DNA from: Phallusia mammillata
Lineage: Eukaryota
Length of the DNA: 64,000 nucleotides
Assembly: GCA_965637545.1 (NCBI GenBank)
Contig: OZ281500.1
Coordinates: 19,282,001 to 19,346,000, forward strand
Direction of reading: 5' to 3'
Shown here: piece by piece, positions 1 through 53,700 of the stretch
Numbering within the stretch: position 1 is the stretch's first letter
Layout: the number at the start of each line of letters is the position of its first letter
Program-made: the position numbers and the translations under genes
The notes under the pieces: generated by a model
What the model was told of the DNA's origin: nothing
Seen by the model: the letters and a program-made list of their open reading frames with translations, nothing else
Databases searched by the model: none

Positions 1-3000
1 AAATCGAAAATTTTGACCCGATTTTCAAAAAACCCAAGGCTATAGCCTTTCCGTTTTTTCGAATTTGGGGGGTCAAAAAATCGAAGAAAAATCCGGTTTT
101 CGGTGGGTTTTAGCGGGAATATTCCAGTTTCAAACCGGTTATGACCGGTTTCTGCCTCCTACCGAACCTCCAAACCGGTTTAAACTGGTTTTTGAAATCG
201 AAAATTTTGACCCGATTTTTGAAAAAACCCTAAGGCTATAATCCTTTCCGTTTTTACGATATTTGGGGGTCAAAAAATCGAAGAAAAATCCGGTTTTCGG
301 TGGGTTTTCACCGGAATATTCCAGTTTCAAACCGGTTTAGACCGGTTTCTGCCTCCTACCGAACCTCCAAACCGGTTTAAACTGGTTTTTGAAATCGAAA
401 ATTTTGACCCGATTTTTGAAAAAACCCAAGGCTATAGCCTTTCCCTTTTTCGATTTTGGGAGGTCAAAAAATCGAAGAAAAATCCGGTTTTCGGTGGGTT
501 TTAGCGGGAATATTCCAGTTTCAAACCGGTTATGACCGGTTTCTGCCTCCTACCGAACCTCCAAACCGGTTTAAACCGGTTTTCATAATCGAAAATTTTG
601 ACCCGATTTTTGAAAAAACCCAAGGCTATAGCCTTTCCCTTTTTCGATTTTGGGAGGTCAAAAAATCGAAGAAAAATCCGGTTTTCGGTGGGTTTTCGCC
701 GGAATATTCCAGTTTCAAACCGGTTCAGACCGGTTTCTGCCTCCTACCGAACCTCCAAACCGTTTTAAACCGGTTTTTGAAATCGAAAATTTTGACCCGA
801 TTTTTGAAAAAACCCAAGGCTATAGCCTTTCCCTTTTTCGATTTTGGGAGGTCAAAAAATCGAAGAAAAATCCGGTTTTCGGTGGGTTTTAGCGGGAATA
901 TTCCAGTTTCAAACCGGTTATGACCGGTTTCTGCCTCCTACCGAACCTCCAAACCGGTTTAAACTGGTTTTTGAAATCGAAAATTTTGACCCGATTTTTG
1001 AAAAAACCCTAAGGCTATAATCCTTTCCGTTTTTACGATATTTGGGGGTCAAAAAATCGAAGCAAAATCCGGTTTTAGGTGGGTTTTCACCGGAATATTC
1101 CAGTTTCAAACCGGTTTAGACCGGTTTCTGCCTCCTACCGAACCTCCAAACCGGTTTAAACTGGTTTTTGAAATCGAAAATTTTGACCCTATTTTTCAAA
1201 AAACCCTGAGGCTATAATCCTTTCCGTTTTTACGATATTTGGTGGTCAAAATATCAAAAAAAAAATCCGGTTTTCTGTGGGTTTTCGCGGGAATATTCCA
1301 GTTTCAAACCGTTTATGACCGGTTTCTGCCACCTACCGAACCTCCAAACCGGGTAAACCGGTTTTTAATATCGAAAATTTTGACCCGATTTTTGAAAAAC
1401 CCTGAGGCTATAATCCTTTCCGTTTTTACGATATTTGGTGGTCAAAATATCAAAAAAAAATCCGGTTTTCGGTGGGTTTTCGCGGGAATATTCCAGTTTC
1501 AAACCGGTTATGACCGGTTTCTGCCTCCTACCGAACCTTTAAACCGGTTTAAATCGGTTTTTAAAATCGAAAATTTTGACCCGATTTTGAAAAAATCCAA
1601 GGCTATAGCCTTTCCACTTTTTCGATTTTGGGAGGTCAAACATCGAAGAAAAATCCGGTTTTCGGTGGGTTTTAGCGGGAATATTCCAGTTTCAAACCGG
1701 TTATGACCGTTTTCTGCCTCCTACCGAACCTCCAAACCGGTTTAAACCGGTTTTGAAAATCGAAAATTTTGACCCGATTTTTAAAAAAAACCCAAGGCTA
1801 TAGCCTTTCCGCTTTTTCGATTTTGGGGGTCAAAAAATCGAAGAAAAATCCGGTTTTAGGTGGGTTTTCACCGGAATATTCCAGTTTCAAACCGGTTTAG
1901 ACCGGTTTCTGCCTCCTACCGAACCTCCAAACCGGTTTAAACTGGTTTTTGAAATCGAAAATTTTGACCCTATTTTTCAAAAAACCCTGAGGCTATAATC
2001 CTTTCCCTTTTTCGATTTTTGGGGGTCAAAAAGTTCGAAAAAAAATCCGGTTTTCTGTGGGTTTTCGCGGGAATATTCCAGTTTCAAACCGGTTATGACC
2101 GGTTTCTGCCACCTACCGAACCTCCAAACCGGGTAAACCGGTTTTTAATATCGAAAATTTTGACCCGATTTTTGAAAAAACCCAAGGCTATAGCCTTTCC
2201 CTTTTTACGAATTTGGGAGGACAAAAAATCGAAGAAAAATCCGGTTTTCGGTGGGTTTTCGCGGGAATATTCCAGTTTCAAACCGGTTATGACCGGTTTC
2301 TGCCTCCTACCGAACCTTTAAACCGATTTTCAAAATCGAAAATTTTGACCCGATTTTCAAAAAACCCAAGGCTATAGCCTTTCCGTTTTTTCGATTTTGG
2401 GGGGTCAAAAAATCGAAGAAAAATCCGGTTTTCGGTGGGTTTTCGCGGGAATATTCCAGTTTCAAACCGGTTATGACCGGTTTCTGCCTCCTACCGAACC
2501 TTTAAACCGATTTTCAAAATCGAAAATTTTGACCCGATTTTCAAAAAACCCAAGGCTATAGCCTTTCCGTTTTTTCGAATTTGGGGGGTCAAAAAATCGA
2601 AGAAAAATCCGGTTTTCGGTGGGTTTTAGCGGGAATATTCCAGTTTCAAACCGGTTATGACCGGTTTCTGCCTCCTACCGAACCTCCAAACCGGTTTAAA
2701 CTGGTTTTTGAAATCGAAAATTTTGACCCGATTTTTGAAAAAACCCTAAGGCTATAATCCTTTCCGTTTTTACGATATTTGGGGGTCAAAAAATCGAAGA
2801 AAAATCCGGTTTTCGGTGGGTTTTCGCGGGAATATTCCAGTTTCAAACCGGTTTTGACCGGTTTCTGCCTCCTACCGAACCTCCAAACCGGTTTAAACCG
2901 GTTTTTGAAATCGAAAATTTTGACCCGATTTTTGAAAAAACCCAAGGCTATAGCCTTTCCCTTTTTCGATTTTGGGAGGTCAAAAAATCGAAGAAAAATC

Positions 3001-4248
3001 CGGTTTTCGGTGGGTTTTCGCGGGAATATTCCAGTTTCAAACCGGTTATGACCGGTTTCTGCCTCCTACCGAACCTCCAAACCGGTTTAAATCAGTTTTT
3101 AAAATCGAAAATTTTGACCCGATTTTGAAAAAATCCAAGGCTATAGCCTTTCCGCTTTTTCGATTTTTGGGGGTCAAAAAATCGAAGAAAAATCCGGTTT
3201 TCTGTGGGTTTTCACCGGAATATTCCAGTTTCAAACCGGTTATGACCGGTTTCTGCCTCCTACCGAACCTCCAAACCGGTTTGAACCGGTTTTGAAAATC
3301 GAAAATTTTGACCCGATTTAAAAAAAAACCAAGGCTATAGCCTTTCCGCTTTTTCAATTTTTGGGGATCAAAAAATCGAAGAAAAATCCGGCTTTCGGTG
3401 GGTTTTCGCCGGAATATTCCAGTTTCAAACCGGTTCAGACCGGTTTCTGCCTCCTACCGAACCTCCAAACCGGTTTAAACTGGTTTTTGAAATCGAAAAT
3501 TTTGACCCGATTTTTAAAAAACCCCAAGGCTATAGCCTTTCCATTTTTTCGATTTTGGGGGGTCAAAAAATCGAAGAAAAATCCGGTTTTCGGTGGGTTT
3601 TCGCGGGAATATTCCAGTTTCGAACCGGTTATGACCGGTTTCTGCCTCCTACCGAACCTCCAAACCGGTTTTCATAGTCGAAAATTTTGACCCGATTTTT
3701 GAAAAAACTTTCCCTTTTTTCGATTTATGGGGGTCAAAAAATCGAAGAAAAATCCGGTTTTCTGTGGGTTTTCGCGGGAATATTCCAGTTTCAAACCGGT
3801 TATGACCGGTTTCTGCCTCCTACCGAACCTCCAAACCGGTTTAAACCGGTTTTCAAAATCGAAAATTTTGACCCGATTTTTTAAAAAAACCTAAGGCTAT
3901 TGTTACTGTTGTTTGCCAGTTAAAGCAAGTTTTTGTGCACTTTTCGGTAAAAATCTCAATCACCATGAATAAAGATAAGTTAAGTAAGCTGCAAGAGCAA
4001 GTAATAATCGGTGGAAAGGGATCGGCAAGACGGAAGAGGAAGGTTATCCACAGGACCGCCACAACCGATGATAAAAAACTACAATCCCATTTGAACCGAT
4101 CATCGGTTGCCTTTCCGTTTTTTGGGTGTCAAAAAATCGAAGAAAAGTCCGGTTTTCACCGGAATATTCCAGTTTCAAACTGGTTTTGACCGGTTTCTGC
4201 CTCCTACCGAACCTCCAAACCCGTTGAAGCCGGTTTTGAAAATCGAAA
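1..4248. repeat. Tandem satellite array, ~194-bp monomer (variants of about 180-197 bp), ~21 copies, probably continuing left of the window
   Basis: Monomer AAATCGAAAATTTTGACCCG...AAACTGGTTTTTG restarts at about 1, 195, 392, 586, 780, 974, 1171, 1367, 1564, 1757, 1952, 2147, 2333, 2517, 2711, 2908, 3102, 3296, 3490, 3675 and 3856. The last unit is interrupted at 3901-4108 and the array ends near 4248. Confidence 0.97.
3901..4108 (+). pseudogene. BTF3: BTF3 / NAC-beta 5' fragment (64 nt upstream sequence plus ~44 N-terminal codons) inserted in a satellite monomer
   Basis: From ATG 3965: [43 protein letters not shown], matching the BTF3 N-terminus ([43 protein letters not shown]). The NAC domain is missing and satellite sequence flanks both sides. 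Confidence 0.92.
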
Positions 4249-4833
4249 TACCCCAATATTGTAGCTTTTTTGTTTGAGTGATTGGTGCGTCGATTGAAAA
4301 CATCAAAGTTTGCAGGAAATTTCTCTTTTCTACCTGTTAGGAGTGTATTATTAAACTGTTACCTATTAAAACTTTTCTGCGCACATTTTCATACTTATTA
4401 TTACGAAACAAAAATATTGTGTTAAAGTTTATTTTAATTTTATCATTGTGGTTATATTTGGCGGCCAAAAAAGTTCAACTTTTAAATATTCTTCCTAGAT
4501 TTGCACAAAATTCTTCGTTCAAAGTGCCTTCACAGTCTGTTTGGGCCTATGCTGTACTCCATGACCTGTTTTTAACAAATATGTTCAAAATTAACCTTTA
4601 TTATACCTGTTTATTTTTCGAACGATTTAGTATGAATTGATACACAATTATTGGTGACCAACAGGCAATTGCATTTGATGAAAAAAAATTATGACATTCT
4701 GCAATTTCACTAATACAAACACAACATAAGGAAATTGAAAAAAATGCATATTTGCCACTTTCAATTTAAGATGAGAATAATTGAAACACTGAATAGCATA
4801 TTCTAAGTAAACAGATTCAATGTTAAACAAAAA

Positions 4834-47700: not shown

Positions 47701-50700
47701 AACGCAAGGTCGTTCTTGATGTCGGTCATCTTAAAACAGCTTCTATCCGGATTTACTGCACCATTTTTGAGACGCTCAGAAAAAAGCCACTCAGTTTTAT
47801 ATTGGTCTGCGGGGACTGATGGAGGATTAATTGCGTCGCTGCCAGAAGCTGTAAACAACAACAAAATTTTTTGCCACTATTTTTCTTGCATAGAAAGTCA
47901 GGTTCAGCTGATGCGTCTGGTACACAAAGTCCACAAGGTACAGATACAAACTTGATCTGGTTCTGGGTTGTCAATTTTCAGTTTTTTGAGTCTGACGAAA
48001 CCGGTTAATTGGGATTACAATTTACCAAGCGTTTAACCAGTTTTCCCGGTTAAGTAGGTTGTGTTTTACCGGTTTGTTGTGTTAACAAATGATAGGCAAC
48101 GGTTCGGTATTCACTAAATTGTCCCGATTAACCAGATTGCGATTAACCAGTTTCGTCTGTATCTGGTATTTTTAATGTCGCAACGTGCATAAACTAAATT
48201 TATGGTTAATTCCAGTTTAATTTATGTGTCCAAAAATAGAAAAGCATTTTCAAAGTCTGCCACGAAGTCACAATGTTGAATGCATCAAATATACACAGAT
48301 TTTCGTTAATTTAAATTTCCTAATAAATCGCTAAAATCGAAAGATCACGCAGAGTTTACTACAACAAAAACGACACTTCGTAAAAAAAGTCAAACATCAA
48401 TTTACCCGGTATGCAACGAAGTCGCAATGTTGAATCCACCATAACACTCAACTGTTGAACGTTCTTGTCACATGACAACGCGTCATCGATGGCGCTCAAG
48501 CATGACGTGGGAAAAGGCAAAAGGGTGACGTTGACTTTCGAAGTGAGACACTGACTTCCGGAGGTCTGCGAAAAAATGGGTTAAAAGTGGTATTTTTTTG
48601 GGTAACCGGGGTTTCCATGGCGCTCTGTTGCCAAGACCAGAAAGGCAACCACCCAAATAGAGCTGTTTTCTGAAAATCGTGTTTATGTGGGTAAACAGCA
48701 TATCTGGCTTGATGACTGACCTATTTTAACTTGAACGCTTGTAATTTGCTAAATCAACAGAAAAACGTTTTTGCGGTTTTTTTGCGAAAACGTTTTTATT
48801 TTTGGGGGGACAATTTCAACGTATATATAGTTGCTTCATGTTAAAATCTCTCATTGTTAAACTTATTTTTGCCAATTTTAAAATTACTGCAAAATGGAAC
48901 ACCAACAAATTTTTCAATAGCTGTGTTAAAAAATAGGTTATATGTCTTGCTTGTTTTTTTCTTTCCTCCATAATGCCTTCATTCTCGCTCGCAAAGAGCC
49001 ACACCAGTCCTATACTTACTTCGGTCAAATATCGCTTGTCCAAAACACTGCTCAACGGGGAACAAATTCGCGAAAAACGGTATTATGTTTGAATACGAAA
49101 CGCCGTGGTAGTGGTTGCATGGCAAATATCATGGGATGTGGTGGCAGGGTTTCGCCGAAAGTACAGGAAAAACGCTGGGATTCTGGACGGTATAAGCCAG
49201 CTGCGCCTTCTCACTATGTTATATTTGCGGGATAGGTCATTTATTTTAAAAAAGAACTTTGCCTTTGGAAGATTTTCTTTCCGCAGATTTCGCTTTAAAT
49301 GAATTGCCGCAACGTTTTGAAAAATAGGGTAAAACGATCAACGTACGCTTCTTGGCCAATATATTTGGCACGTGTGTGTATTACTGCGTAAGGTAATCCC
49401 GCGTGAAAACCTAAATATTTCTTTTAAAAACATTTGTCACAAAAATATATAATACGTCAAAAGTACAACAAAAATACAAAATATGAAACAGTGAGGGCGT
49501 CCTACCTGGTAGAGTTGAAAAAAGCTGAGTGCTGGCATATGGGGCTGTAAGACGAGGTTGTCGGATGAGTTGTAAGTTTCTGTACGGAGATCTTTTAAAT
49601 GACACTGCACAAAAACATGTTACGTGTAAAAAACTTCTTTAAACAATTACTTGAAGCAAAATATTACGTAAGAGATCTGGAACAAAATTTATTGCTAGCT
49701 TTTTTTGCTGCAAAATTGTTTTTACGTTGGAGATACCTGTCATTGATATTATAATACATATAAACTAACAGTTTATTATTTGTTGTATTTTGAGGTAACA
49801 AATGATTAGTCGCCACATTTAATGTAACAATTGATAAAACGCTACATCCCCAGCATAAAGACTAAGATTTTGTGACCTATTGAAACGTAATTGTGTTTAA
49901 AGATACATGCTTATATATCTTGATGATTCATCGTCACTTACATCCTATGCGAACTTTTGCTCCGCGCGATAAGCTGTTGAGCACATTTTAGTCAAGCGGC
50001 GAGCAACTAAGTAAAAGTCGAAAATGGCGGTGCTTCGGGTCCTAGTTAGAGTTCATATATTGGGTTTTTGAATTGAATAGGTCAAAGGTCACGGTAATAG
50101 ATTGTAAACCAGTATGTTAAATCTTTGTTTCCTTTGTGGTAAAAAAAAATTGCAGAAAAAAGTTCGGTCAATTTTCAGTTGAACCAAAAGATGGGAATTT
50201 AAAAGAGTGCGGAGCTGCGTTAAGCTGTCCAGACAACAACTGAAAAGGTAGGAAAAATTCCAGAAATTTCTTATTGACTTAACGGCATATGTGAAGCGGT
50301 AGGCGATTCGGCCGCACGACCGGGGAAATTTTCCCAAAATTTATTTGAAATTCCTTGAAAAAGCGTCACACCGTTGAATTTCCCATCTGCTGAGCCACAC
50401 GAAGCAAACCAAACGCCGAAGCGAATTTCAAGACACAAGGCAAGGGAATAACCCGACAGTCTCTCTTATTCTCTATTACAATGGTTTTCAACTAGTTTCA
50501 GGCTATGGCTATGTATAACTAAATGAATATTGCTGACCAATTCATTGTAAAGTAAGGATAAAGAAAGCATGTACAACTATAGTATATTGGCTTGGTACAT
50601 ATTTCTTCAATACAGAATTTCGAGCTGGAATATAGAACAATTGACATCTATGGCCAATACTTGACAATTATTTTCCATCAATACAGAATTTCCATGGGCC

Positions 50701-53700
50701 ACCAGTAGTTCAATTAAATTAAATCGCGGACCAGTTCATTTTTACGTAAGGATAAAGAAAGCATCGACAAAAAGAATATTGGTTTGGTATATATAAAAGA
50801 ATATGTTGGATATATTCCTTCAATGCAGAATTTCGAGCAGTGATACCAAACAATTGACATCTATGGCCAATCCTTGGCAAAGCGTTTACTCAACTATTTC
50901 CAGTTAATCACCAAATACAATTAACGTCCGAGGACCACCCAAAAATTCATCATGGGCCACCAGTTGGGAACCACTGCTCCATCATAAGTTTTTTATAACC
51001 ATCGTTTTTAAGCGAAATTTAGCAACATGTAATGGTGTCACTAACCACAAGCTATTGTTATACAAATTCCTGTTATGCAGTGAACTATCGTAATCCTAGA
51101 CCAGCCGTAATCGATATCGCTTGGCAAGTTCAGTCCGCCAACGAACTTCCCCGCTGGTTTATCCAAACAATAGATGCCCTTCTCGACCTTTCTTAGTGGT
51201 TTGCCCCAAATTTGCATACAGCGTGACTGGCACCTTTGAAAATATTTGAAGACCTTTGCTGCCGACAAGACGAAAACTTGAAAGAAAATCGTGAAGAAAA
51301 ATGGGTACTTTCACGAGAAACTCAAGATAAGTTGAAAACAACACCCGTGTACACAGTTGACAGTTTAAAGGTACGCAAGGTTGTTTGTTGTTGACAAAAC
51401 AATTGCAGCTTTGGCGGGTATTTATTGCAGCATTTGTTTGCAAGTGTGGTAAATCCCGTTTATCTAACGAGCAAAGAGTTTAAAAATATGACTCCAAACC
51501 GCAACCTCAGCTCTGTGGCCTCATGAGCATCGGAAGAAGCTAAGTGCTGATTGAATAATTTATTGTTTAGCTGCCACAAACATCGCGATGGTTTGTGTTG
51601 AAAACAACGCAACTGTTTTGCACAGATCAATAAAATCGGCATCAAACTAATCGATACGGAAAATACCCGTTTAATTTGAAGCCACACTAACGTGCCTATT
51701 CCGCTCGATTCAAGGCAAGTATGCAGGATAAGAAACGGGATATTCCACATGAGGTGTCAGTAACAGCTATTGGCCTAACGATGGATTTTTTCAGATGAAA
51801 TGACAAAGATTTGACGGGTGATACACTCTGTGTGCCCCCTTTGTAACTGATCGTCTACGTTATGGATGTAGGTCGGAATTCCCTAATATTGACGAGGATA
51901 CATCACAATTTAAATGTATTGCCTACAATTTAGGGGTATTCTGATTCCTTGAGGAACGCGAACAATTTAACTGATAGTTTTTGTGATTAATCCTTGCGCA
52001 CTCAACGTGAATGCATGTATTTATGCTAATGCACAAATTGAAAAGTGGAAAAATAACATTATTCGATGTAACAGTAGTCTAAGTTTTGCAAAACCAACAA
52101 ACTTGAAACCAATAAAGCTGGGAAACGGGTTGGAATGGTCAAGTCTGTATTTGCGTCAATAAATTCTATGTTTCACCGACCTACTGAGAACTGTAGTACA
52201 AAACAGTGTGGTAGAGGTATGATATAAATCAGGGCAAAGACAAGCGGCAAAATATGGGAAGCGAAACCACGAAATCCGTCCGACGCGAACCACATAATAC
52301 GAGCCGTTTAGCGAGCAAGGGATGAACGATGAGGGTTAAATGAATGGATAACCAATGTTCGGTCGGTTTCGATAGGCGGTATATTAATATTTGTCAAGTA
52401 AATCATAAATTTAAAACTTGATCCTAAGAGATAGACTAGGAAGGCAATTGCGGTGAAAGTGGCCATTTCTGGTTTTTTTGAGAGTTGAAACTGTATTGCA
52501 CAAAGGAGGGGTTGACCATGTGAATGACTCGCAGTGTTGTGTACAATATATGTACACATTTTTGGAATTAGGAAATTTTTGGAAGTAGATTTTTTGAAAT
52601 GACAAACAAAGTTTTTGAAATGACCCATTTTTTTGTCTTTTTACGAGCAAAAACATTTTTTTACAAACAAGTCTAACGACTTTCCACGGCACAAGTTTAG
52701 CTGAAATATATGTTGATGTGCTTTAATGCAAATGTCCCAGTAATTGCAATTTCCGGGTGAAAAACCCCACATTTGCAACTATTGCTGGAATTTTTGCTCC
52801 CTCATAAAATCAGCATATTGTCGGTCTGAAGTAGGAAAAATTGTCACAATGCAGATTTTTATCCCGCTGAATCAGCCGTTGAATTGGGGCATTACCATGC
52901 ATTAAGGTTTTTAATTACTGTAGAAAATTAAAGCATACATTTAAGTGTAAAATTCCAGTTTCAATTGTTAATGACTTTAAAAGGACGCGAGCCCCTGCAA
53001 AATCGCTAACGTTGGCAATATAGCAATGGACAGAGCAGTCTGGTTCCTCTATTCTGGAATAGAGGAACCAACATCAAAGGACAAAAGACACGGTTATTTG
53101 AGAAGCTACACAAACATGGTCTGTTGGTCTGGGTTAAAAGACAATGCCTCTATTGCGCCATTCTTGACTTGACTCATGACACAGAAGAGTACGATTCGAA
53201 AAAAACACAAATTGTATCAGTTTGCTTTCCAAAAATGCCAGTAACGTTCCTACAAGTACGGACCTTCCTATCGATGTGTACTAGTGAAAAACAGTACAGA
53301 CAAAATTGTCTCTTCAGAAGAATGGCGTTTAGGGTACCAATCTGTGGTCCGCAAAGGAATCACATTTAGTTAACATAATATGTATTTTGTCTTAAATTTT
53401 TTATTTTAAGATTGTTTTACAGCCCAATGTTTTTATAACGGTGTACTTAATTACATACCTTTAACGGATGTTTGTTACTTAAGTGCATGAAACAGTTTGT
53501 ATGGTGGGACGGTTTTGTACACGCGAATCTTTCAATATATCTCGTGATGTTGTTTAAAAGTTTAGACCAGTGCTCTTCAACCTTTTTGGGCTTGGTGAAC
53601 CCTTAAAGTTGTTGTGACGAACTCATGCACCCTGTTTACTTTAACTGAGATAACTGAAAGGTTAACTGAGATAAAAGCTAGATGAAAAATCATTATGCAT

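What the first reader, a model, noticed from the sequence alone, without database searches (positions are those of the whole stretch)
3901..4108. Host gene fragment (BTF3/NAC-beta 5' end) captured at the axis of the satellite palindrome
Seen: AAGGCTAT|AGCCTT is split into AAGGCTAT, a 208-bp insert, then GCCTTTCC. Only one base is lost, and there is no TSD or poly(A) tail. The insert is 64 nt of upstream sequence plus the BTF3 N-terminal codons. It is uninterrupted across GGK/GS, where I recall the human gene has an intron (needs checking). Established: LINE-made retrocopies usually keep the 3' end, a poly(A) tail and TSDs, which is the opposite pattern. Inference: capture of a cDNA or DNA fragment during repair of a break at a cruciform tip. 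If other monomers genome-wide hold different inserts at this position, the satellite would be a site-specific sequence-capture array, loosely analogous to spacer acquisition or piRNA-cluster trapping. One event does not establish a system.
Basis: partly seen in the sequence, partly recalled or inferred. Interest (0 to 1): 0.8.

Follow-up and report, generated by a model that had tools for sequence, protein, structure and literature searches.

The report
BTF3 mRNA-start patch in satellite repeat
One unit of a sea-squirt 194-bp satellite repeat is split at its small central palindrome by a 208-bp piece copied from the start of the housekeeping BTF3 messenger RNA, which is most simply a one-off scar of DNA break repair and not a sequence-capturing system.

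Summary
A 194-bp satellite fills window 1-4250. One monomer reads AAGGCTAT, then a 208-bp insert at 3901-4108, then GCCTTTCC. One base is lost, and there is no target-site duplication and no poly(A). The insert encodes the first 44 residues of BTF3 (E 1e-15 to human BTF3).

Genomic contigs of the parental gene are colinear with the insert, and ascidian BTF3 coding regions are intronless.

New evidence still favours an RNA origin. A full-length cDNA contig from an RNA run carries the Smart-seq 5' adaptor directly before position 3902, one base from the insert start at 3901. Parental homology ends at 4095. The last 13 nt are filler, and 10-11 nt of it are an inverted copy of 4062-4072, as in snap-back synthesis during alternative end joining.

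The perfect palindrome is only 14 bp, so a cruciform is doubtful. However, the neighbouring monomer has lost exactly this core, which suggests a fragile centre.

None of the other 20 monomers holds an insert, so nothing supports a capture array. The closest known kind is the "class 2 templated sequence insertion", a cDNA patch at a double-strand break. This is a new member of a known kind, of modest interest. Short-read support for the junctions is thin.

The parts
1..3900 (.). 194-bp satellite array, about 20 monomers. Each has a central perfect 14-bp palindrome AAGGCTA|TAGCCTT flanked by weakly complementary arms.
   Evidence: TRF; monomer alignment; arm complementarity about 63%; DNA fold
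3893..3900 (+). Left half of the split palindrome core (AAGGCTAT). The T at 3900 is shared with the parental genomic sequence, giving 1 nt of ambiguity.
   Evidence: parental contigs align from 3900 (table 8, records 1 and 17)
3901..3964 (+). Copy of the BTF3 5' UTR. The 5' end of the mRNA, marked by the Smart-seq adaptor, maps at 3902.
   Evidence: tables 7 and 8 (X6 record 25; loose end GGTATCAACGCAGAGTACGGG before 3902); adaptor identity
3965..4095 (+). BTF3/NAC-beta codons 1 to about 44. It carries the insert-specific change R14I (T at 4005 where the parent has G). It stops before the NAC domain.
   Evidence: table 3 (3934 T>A, 4005 T>G in parental contigs)
4096..4108 (+). 13-nt filler CCGATCATCGGTT that is not in the parental mRNA. 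Positions 4099-4109 are the reverse complement of 4062-4072, and 4094-4100 directly repeat 4063-4069.
   Evidence: 11-nt inverted match; 5 of 20000 shuffles give a terminal 10-nt inverted copy; table 7 (the mRNA continues AAAACTCGCCGTG... after 4095)
4109..4250 (.). Right part of the interrupted monomer plus a last partial monomer, at the edge of the array. It starts GCCTTTCC and carries two further small deletions relative to the consensus.
3606..3776 (.). Neighbouring monomer in which the 14-nt palindrome core is deleted (junction 3708/3709). This is a second rearrangement centred on the same axis.

Best explanation
This is a one-off repair scar. A DNA break arose at or within 1-2 nt of the centre of the short palindrome in a monomer near the edge of the satellite array. 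The break was sealed by end joining that used a patch copied from the abundant BTF3 mRNA.

The patch was a reverse-transcribed copy that ran to the 5' end of the mRNA. This gives the left junction at 3901 against the RNA start at 3902. The copy extends only 194-195 nt into the message.

At the right junction the end was extended by a short templated filler. Part of that filler is a fold-back (snap-back) copy of sequence 25-35 nt upstream. The end was then joined to GCCTTTCC with 0-1 nt of microhomology.

Shown:
- the structure of the insert
- the intact donor gene elsewhere in the genome
- the coincidence of the insert start with the 5' end of the RNA
- the divergence from the parent after 4095
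- the inverted filler
- the absence of a target-site duplication and of poly(A)

Inferred:
- the break itself and its cause
- an RNA rather than a DNA template
- the enzyme, which could be a retroelement reverse transcriptase acting in trans or a Pol-theta-like polymerase

The fragment has no function. It lacks the NAC domain, carries R14I in an otherwise invariant motif, and only the parental alleles are seen in the one RNA run examined.
For: - Insert anatomy.
- BTF3 identity: E 1e-15; 88% to Phallusia mammillata BTF3.
- The donor is intact and elsewhere. Parental contigs with different upstream and downstream sequence appear in X1, X3 and X4 (table 8). The rest of BTF3 is not in the window.
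- RNA 5' end: the 865-nt X6 contig aligns to 3902-4095 and is preceded by GGTATCAACGCAGAGTACGGG (table 7). This is the Smart-seq template-switch label of RNA 5' ends.
- Right junction: the mRNA continues AAAACTCGCCGTGAATAAC... after 4095, whereas the window has a filler with an 11-nt inverted copy.
- Known precedent, RNA patches: class 2 templated sequence insertions have no TSD and no poly(A), show microdeletion, microhomology or filler, and use reverse-transcribed RNA as a patch (PMC5110952).
- Known precedent, filler: reverse-complement flank inserts arise by snap-back synthesis in Pol-theta end joining (PMC5068794).
- Axis fragility: the adjacent monomer lost exactly the core.
Against: - The parent is intronless over the copied part, so no splice junction proves an RNA origin.
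- The insert holds one base (T at 3901) upstream of the observed RNA start, and that base matches the parental DNA.
- Only one RNA contig from one run defines the RNA 5' end.
- The 3 nt CCG of the filler are not cleanly explained.
- The perfect palindrome is only 14 bp, so structure-induced breakage is not established.
- Junction support from short-read contigs is thin. One 73-nt X3 unitig carries only 9 nt of satellite, and the insert-specific left branch is not seen in X1 or X4.
Confidence: 0.62

Rival explanations
1. DNA-level copying. The broken end invaded or copied the parental BTF3 locus itself, by synthesis-dependent repair or template switching, or a free genomic DNA fragment was ligated in. 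No RNA was involved.
For: - The parental genomic sequence is colinear with the whole insert and aligns from 3900-3901, 1-2 nt upstream of the observed RNA start (records 1, 10 and 17).
- An intronless parent means nothing excludes DNA.
- Template-switch signatures at the 3' junction also occur in replication-based mechanisms.
Against: A DNA fragment has no reason to begin within 1-2 nt of the mRNA 5' end. For random ends the chance is on the order of 1% or less.
Confidence: 0.2
2. The satellite is a site-specific sequence-capture array. Its palindromic centre is broken recurrently and stores foreign or transcript-derived pieces, by analogy with spacer acquisition or piRNA-cluster trapping.
For: Two independent rearrangements, the insert and the core deletion in the next monomer, centre on the same axis. 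The satellite is present in an RNA-run contig (record 26).
Against: - None of the other 20 monomers in the window has an insert.
- In three DNA runs, contigs that leave position 3900 continue with the normal AGCCTTTCCGTTTT... (209, 266 and 36 contigs, agreement 0.83-0.87, table 7).
- The insert-specific depth in X3 is about single-copy.
- There are no small-RNA data.
Confidence: 0.03
3. Assembly chimera. The BTF3 piece was wrongly joined into the satellite by the assembler.
For: The left-junction branch is not seen in X1 or X4.
Against: - The X3 unitig 3892-3964 matches the window with 0 mismatches. It includes 9 nt of satellite and the insert-specific T at 3934, at depth 294 against 261 for the unique flank (records 9 and 16, and table 3).
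- The insert differs from the parental contigs at about 6 of 194 positions.
- The insert ends in a filler absent from the parent, which a chimera of true sequences would not create.
Confidence: 0.04
4. Ordinary LINE-mediated processed retrocopy made by target-primed reverse transcription.
For: It derives from a highly expressed housekeeping mRNA. The parental homology ends inside an A6 run of the mRNA (TTGAAAAAAC, loose end after 4095), which could serve as an internal priming site.
Against: There is no target-site duplication, no poly(A) and no 3' end of the mRNA. The target is not T-rich at the junction.
Confidence: 0.05

Closest known systems
Class 2 templated sequence insertions and polymorphisms (Onozawa and Aplan; PMC5110952), together with cDNA capture at double-strand breaks in yeast as cited there
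   Same: A short patch copied from a distant transcribed locus whose donor stays intact. There is no target-site duplication and no poly(A). The junctions show microdeletion, 0-1 nt of microhomology and filler nucleotides, and the event is heritable.
   Different: Here the patch begins at the very 5' end of the mRNA and lies in a tunicate satellite monomer at a palindrome centre. An RNA origin cannot be proven by splice junctions because the parent has no intron there.
Polymerase-theta-mediated end joining with templated (snap-back) flank insertions (PMC5068794; also PMC4912351 and PMC2943611, listed but not read)
   Same: The filler at the junction is a reverse-complement copy of sequence 25-35 nt away on the same end. 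Priming homologies are 1-2 nt, and two overlapping templated pieces may be present.
   Different: The template lies inside the captured patch and not in the chromosomal flank. The enzyme was not tested. The template is 27-37 nt from the patch end, further away than most reported cases, about 85% of which lie within 10 bp.
Endonuclease-independent LINE-1 retrotransposition, or trans use of a retroelement reverse transcriptase at broken ends (as discussed in PMC5110952)
   Same: Reverse transcription is primed at a pre-existing break. Target-site duplication and poly(A) are absent and the 3' end can be truncated.
   Different: No LINE sequence is attached, and no retroelement was identified in the window.
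Centre-break rearrangement of palindromes (palindromic AT-rich repeats, hairpin or cruciform breakage)
   Same: The breakpoint and a neighbouring deletion are centred on a dyad axis.
   Different: The perfect palindrome is only 14 bp and the arms are about 63% complementary. Known fragile palindromes are hundreds of bp long and nearly perfect.

Membership tests
Class 2 templated sequence insertion (DSB repair patch) | No target-site duplication | tested here: met
   The flanks are AAGGCTAT and GCCTTTCC. One base is lost and none is duplicated.
Class 2 templated sequence insertion (DSB repair patch) | No poly(A) tract or polyadenylation signal at the 3' end | tested here: met
   The insert ends ...GAACCGATCATCGGTT.
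Class 2 templated sequence insertion (DSB repair patch) | Donor locus intact elsewhere in the genome (copy, not cut) | tested here: met
   Parental contigs with their own upstream and downstream sequence are present in X1, X3 and X4, and the mRNA is present in X6. The remainder of BTF3 is absent from the window.
Class 2 templated sequence insertion (DSB repair patch) | End-joining features at the junctions (microdeletion, microhomology, filler) | tested here: met
   There is a 1-nt loss, ambiguity of 1 nt at each junction (T and G), and a 13-nt filler containing an inverted templated copy.
Class 2 templated sequence insertion (DSB repair patch) | Patch derived from RNA | tested here: inconclusive
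   The parent is intronless, so no splice junction can be tested. The insert start at 3901 lies 1 nt from the adaptor-marked RNA 5' end at 3902.
LINE-mediated processed retrocopy | Target-site duplication, poly(A) tail and retained 3' end of the mRNA | tested here: not met
   None of the three is present. The copy stops at codon 44 of about 160.
BTF3 / NAC-beta protein-coding gene | NAC domain (PF01849) and full-length coding region of about 160 aa | tested here: not met
   Pfam finds no NAC domain in the 48-aa fragment. Only residues 1-44 align, and there is an R14I change in a column that is R in all seven compared orthologues.
Cruciform-prone fragile palindrome | Long, near-perfect inverted repeat | tested here: not met
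   The perfect core is 14 bp. The 50-nt arms match at 29-36 of 51-57 aligned positions. The DNA fold gives a 5-bp stem with a 4-nt loop at the core.
Cruciform-prone fragile palindrome | Rearrangement breakpoints clustered at the centre | tested here: inconclusive
   Two events, the insert and a 14-nt core deletion in the next monomer, occur among 21 monomers. This is suggestive but too few.
Site-specific capture array (CRISPR-like or piRNA-cluster-like) | Many different inserts at the same position of different repeat units | tested here: not met
   None of the other 20 monomers in the window has one. The consensus continuation after 3900 is normal in three DNA runs. A genome-wide census was not possible.
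Site-specific capture array (CRISPR-like or piRNA-cluster-like) | Small RNAs produced from the inserts | not testable with these tools
   No small-RNA run was available.

The most novel reading that the evidence does not exclude
The short palindromic centre of this tunicate satellite is a recurrent break site. In the germ line it is preferentially patched with reverse-transcribed 5' ends of abundant mRNAs, so that arrays genome-wide hold a scattered archive of transcript starts.
Probability: 0.03. Interest if true: 0.7.

Novelty: new member of a known kind. Interest (0 to 1): 0.3.

Why it matters
This is a clean natural example, in a chordate outside the vertebrates, of a break sealed with a copy of a messenger RNA's 5' end. 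Both junctions are readable. One junction lies at the RNA start, and the other carries a fold-back filler typical of alternative end joining.

Such scars show which repair routes act in the germ line, and that satellite edges can preserve them. The finding does not reveal a new system. The fragment is non-functional and appears to be a single event.

Tried and rejected
- Intron test: rejected as uninformative because the parent and other ascidian BTF3 genes are intronless.
- Parental locus: I looked up the closest protein (P0022, Phallusia mammillata) for its genomic locus, and nothing is on record. The parental locus itself was therefore not read.
- Other assemblies: I looked up the exact 74-aa and 84-aa ORFs of the insert in public assemblies, and nothing is on record.
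- Earlier scan notes: nothing relevant came up by place, by sequence or by words such as BTF3, satellite or retrocopy. One note did say the genome is a sea squirt.
- Helitron or other transposon capture: rejected. The insert has no transposon-type termini, and the 3' hairpin is built from BTF3 coding sequence plus filler.
- Exact exon-1 copy: rejected. Related genes read through ...PGIEEV without a break, and the mRNA continues past 4095.
- Other searches: Rfam found no RNA family in the window. A search for literature on a Phallusia satellite found nothing.
- Related mRNA: alignment to a related ascidian contig (L008) showed a homologous 5' UTR but gave no extra information on the start site.

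Full report
**What is there**

The window begins with a tandem array of a 194-bp unit (TRF: 1-3900, 20.2 copies, 90% matches). The array resumes after the insert and ends near 4250.

I anchored the units on GGAATATTCC and aligned them. With the leading partial unit this gives 21 monomer centres:
- 13 have the perfect 14-bp palindrome AAGGCTATAGCCTT.
- 6 have a variant that disrupts it (ATAATCC).
- 1 monomer (3606-3776) has lost the core altogether, with the junction at 3708/3709.
- 1 monomer (3777-4160) reads AAGGCTAT, then 208 bp, then GCCTTTCC.

Only the A of AGCC is missing from the interrupted monomer. Nothing is duplicated and there is no A-tail. The window has no N and no other BTF3-like sequence.

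**What the insert is**

The ATG lies at 3965, preceded by 64 nt. The translation is [44 protein letters not shown].... It matches human BTF3 residues 6-50 at E 1e-15.

The closest full-length proteins are ascidian. Phallusia mammillata BTF3 is 88% identical, and Ciona and Clavelina are 77-81% identical.

The fragment stops before the NAC domain, and Pfam gives no hit. It carries I instead of R at residue 14, a column that is R in all seven orthologues aligned.

**Reads**

The only read-laying run laid Logan contigs of three DNA runs from three studies and one RNA run on 3840-4640.

*The parental mRNA.*
- In the RNA run (X6), an 865-nt contig aligns to 3902-4095.
- On its 5' side the contig continues with GGTATCAACGCAGAGTACGGG. 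This is the Smart-seq template-switch oligo used as a label of RNA 5' ends (bioRxiv 10.1101/2022.01.12.476004).
- On its 3' side it continues AAAACTCGCCGTGAATAACATTCCGGGCAT, that is ...KKLAVNNIPG, the normal BTF3 sequence.
- The contig is therefore the parental mRNA. Its first base corresponds to 3902, one base from the insert start at 3901. Parental homology stops at 4095.

*The parental gene.*
- In X1, a contig has 30 unrelated upstream letters and then aligns to 3900-4089.
- In X4, a contig aligns to 3900-4057.
- In X3, a contig aligns to 3935-4095 and then runs on for 7.5 kb.
- All are colinear with the insert, so the parent has no intron there.

*Differences between insert and parent.*
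- The parent differs from the window at 3934 (A, not T) and at 4005 (G, not T, which makes residue 14 R and not I).
- From the mismatch counts in table 8, about four more positions near the alignment ends also differ. The total is roughly 6 of 194.

*Support for the junctions.*
- An X3 unitig (3892-3964, no mismatch, depth 294 against 261 for the unique flank) joins 9 nt of satellite to the insert and carries the insert-specific T at 3934.
- This supports the left junction, but by the tool's 31-letter rule it does not count as bridging.
- That branch is not visible in X1 or X4. The insert could therefore be polymorphic, but contigs cannot show absence.
- X4 has the insert-type T at 4005, which hints that it may hold the insert.

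**The intron argument**

The Clavelina lepadiformis BTF3 gene spans 486 nt for 161 aa. A related tunicate-like gene spans 480 nt for 159 aa on five contigs. Together with the colinear parental contigs, this means the lack of an intron in the insert says nothing about a cDNA origin.

**Why RNA is still the better guess**

The left boundary of the insert lies within 1-2 nt of the adaptor-marked 5' end of the mRNA. A random DNA fragment would rarely begin there. A reverse transcript that ran to the end of its template would.

The extra T at 3901 matches the parental DNA, so a transcript starting 1-2 nt further upstream would have to be assumed. This is ordinary for start-site clusters but is not shown here.

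**The right junction**

Positions 4096-4108 (CCGATCATCGGTT) are not parental.
- Positions 4099-4109 are the exact reverse complement of 4062-4072. The match is 11 nt, and only 5 of 20000 shuffles give a terminal 10-nt inverted copy.
- Positions 4094-4100 directly repeat 4063-4069.
- The pieces overlap by 1-2 nt with each other and with the flanks.

This is the pattern described for templated flank insertions in polymerase-theta end joining, where reverse-complement copies arise by snap-back synthesis (PMC5068794). The enzyme is an inference.

**The target**

The dyad axis is AAGGCTA|TAGCCTT, and the insert lies 1 nt to its right.

Beyond the 14-bp core the arms are only about 63% complementary. 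As single-stranded DNA the region folds into three separate small hairpins, with the core forming a 5-bp stem and a 4-nt loop (z -2.5). A true cruciform is therefore doubtful. Hairpin formation on single strands during replication is possible.

The adjacent monomer has lost exactly the core. This is a second event at the same axis and suggests some fragility, but two events are too few to establish it. Both lie in the last three, more degenerate monomers at the array edge, where homogenisation is weakest.

**Comparison with what is known**

The structure fits 'class 2 templated sequence insertions'. These have no target-site duplication and no poly(A), show end-joining junction features, and use a reverse-transcribed patch to repair a double-strand break. 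They are reported from human cells and human polymorphisms, with yeast precedents (PMC5110952).

It fails every hallmark of a LINE-made retrocopy. It is a fragment and not a BTF3 gene.

Nothing supports a capture array. No other monomer in the window holds an insert. In the three DNA runs the sequence following position 3900 in other monomers is the normal one (table 7).

**Verdict**

The intron argument is void, and a new argument based on the 5' end replaces it.

This is a new member of a known kind, of modest interest (0.3). The capture-array reading is not excluded genome-wide, and I give it about 3%.

Noticed in passing
window 3606-3776 (junction 3708/3709): The monomer just before the interrupted one has a 14-nt deletion that removes exactly the palindromic core (CCAAGGCTATAGCC). 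It also has a separate 10-nt deletion further left.
   Followed up: partly
window 4109-4160: The interrupted monomer has two further deletions to the right of the insert. About 8-9 nt are missing within GTTTTTTCGATTTTGGGG, and 11 nt (GGTGGGTTTTC) are missing between direct GGTTTTC repeats. Whether they arose in the same event is unknown.
   Followed up: no
window 2264-2631: Two adjacent 184-bp monomers share the same 10-nt deletion, and sets of monomers recur in the same order. This indicates a higher-order repeat structure in the array.
   Followed up: no
window 20466-20975 (- strand): An open frame matches the YAP-binding domain of TEAD transcription factors (PF17725, E 2e-12). It is probably an exon of a TEAD gene.
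   Followed up: no
L001 1001-1486 and 1626 onward; L002 1001-1486 and 2330 onward: In Clavelina lepadiformis the intronless BTF3 coding region is followed on the same strand by the eIF3c gene. In one assembly the gap is only 140 bp, which could mean an operon-like pair.
   Followed up: no
window 4151-4233: A 162-nt contig of the RNA run X6 matches the satellite (depth 4.4). It reflects either low-level satellite transcription or DNA carry-over (record 26).
   Followed up: no
window 4093-4095 and 3880-3892: The parental mRNA reads TTTGAAAAAAC at the point where homology ends. The satellite consensus has the same 11-mer just left of the palindrome (GATTTTTGAAAAAACCC). It is low-complexity sequence and may be coincidence.
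   Followed up: no
window 50599-50667 and 50812-50880: Two 69-nt direct repeats, 86% identical and 213 bp apart.
   Followed up: no
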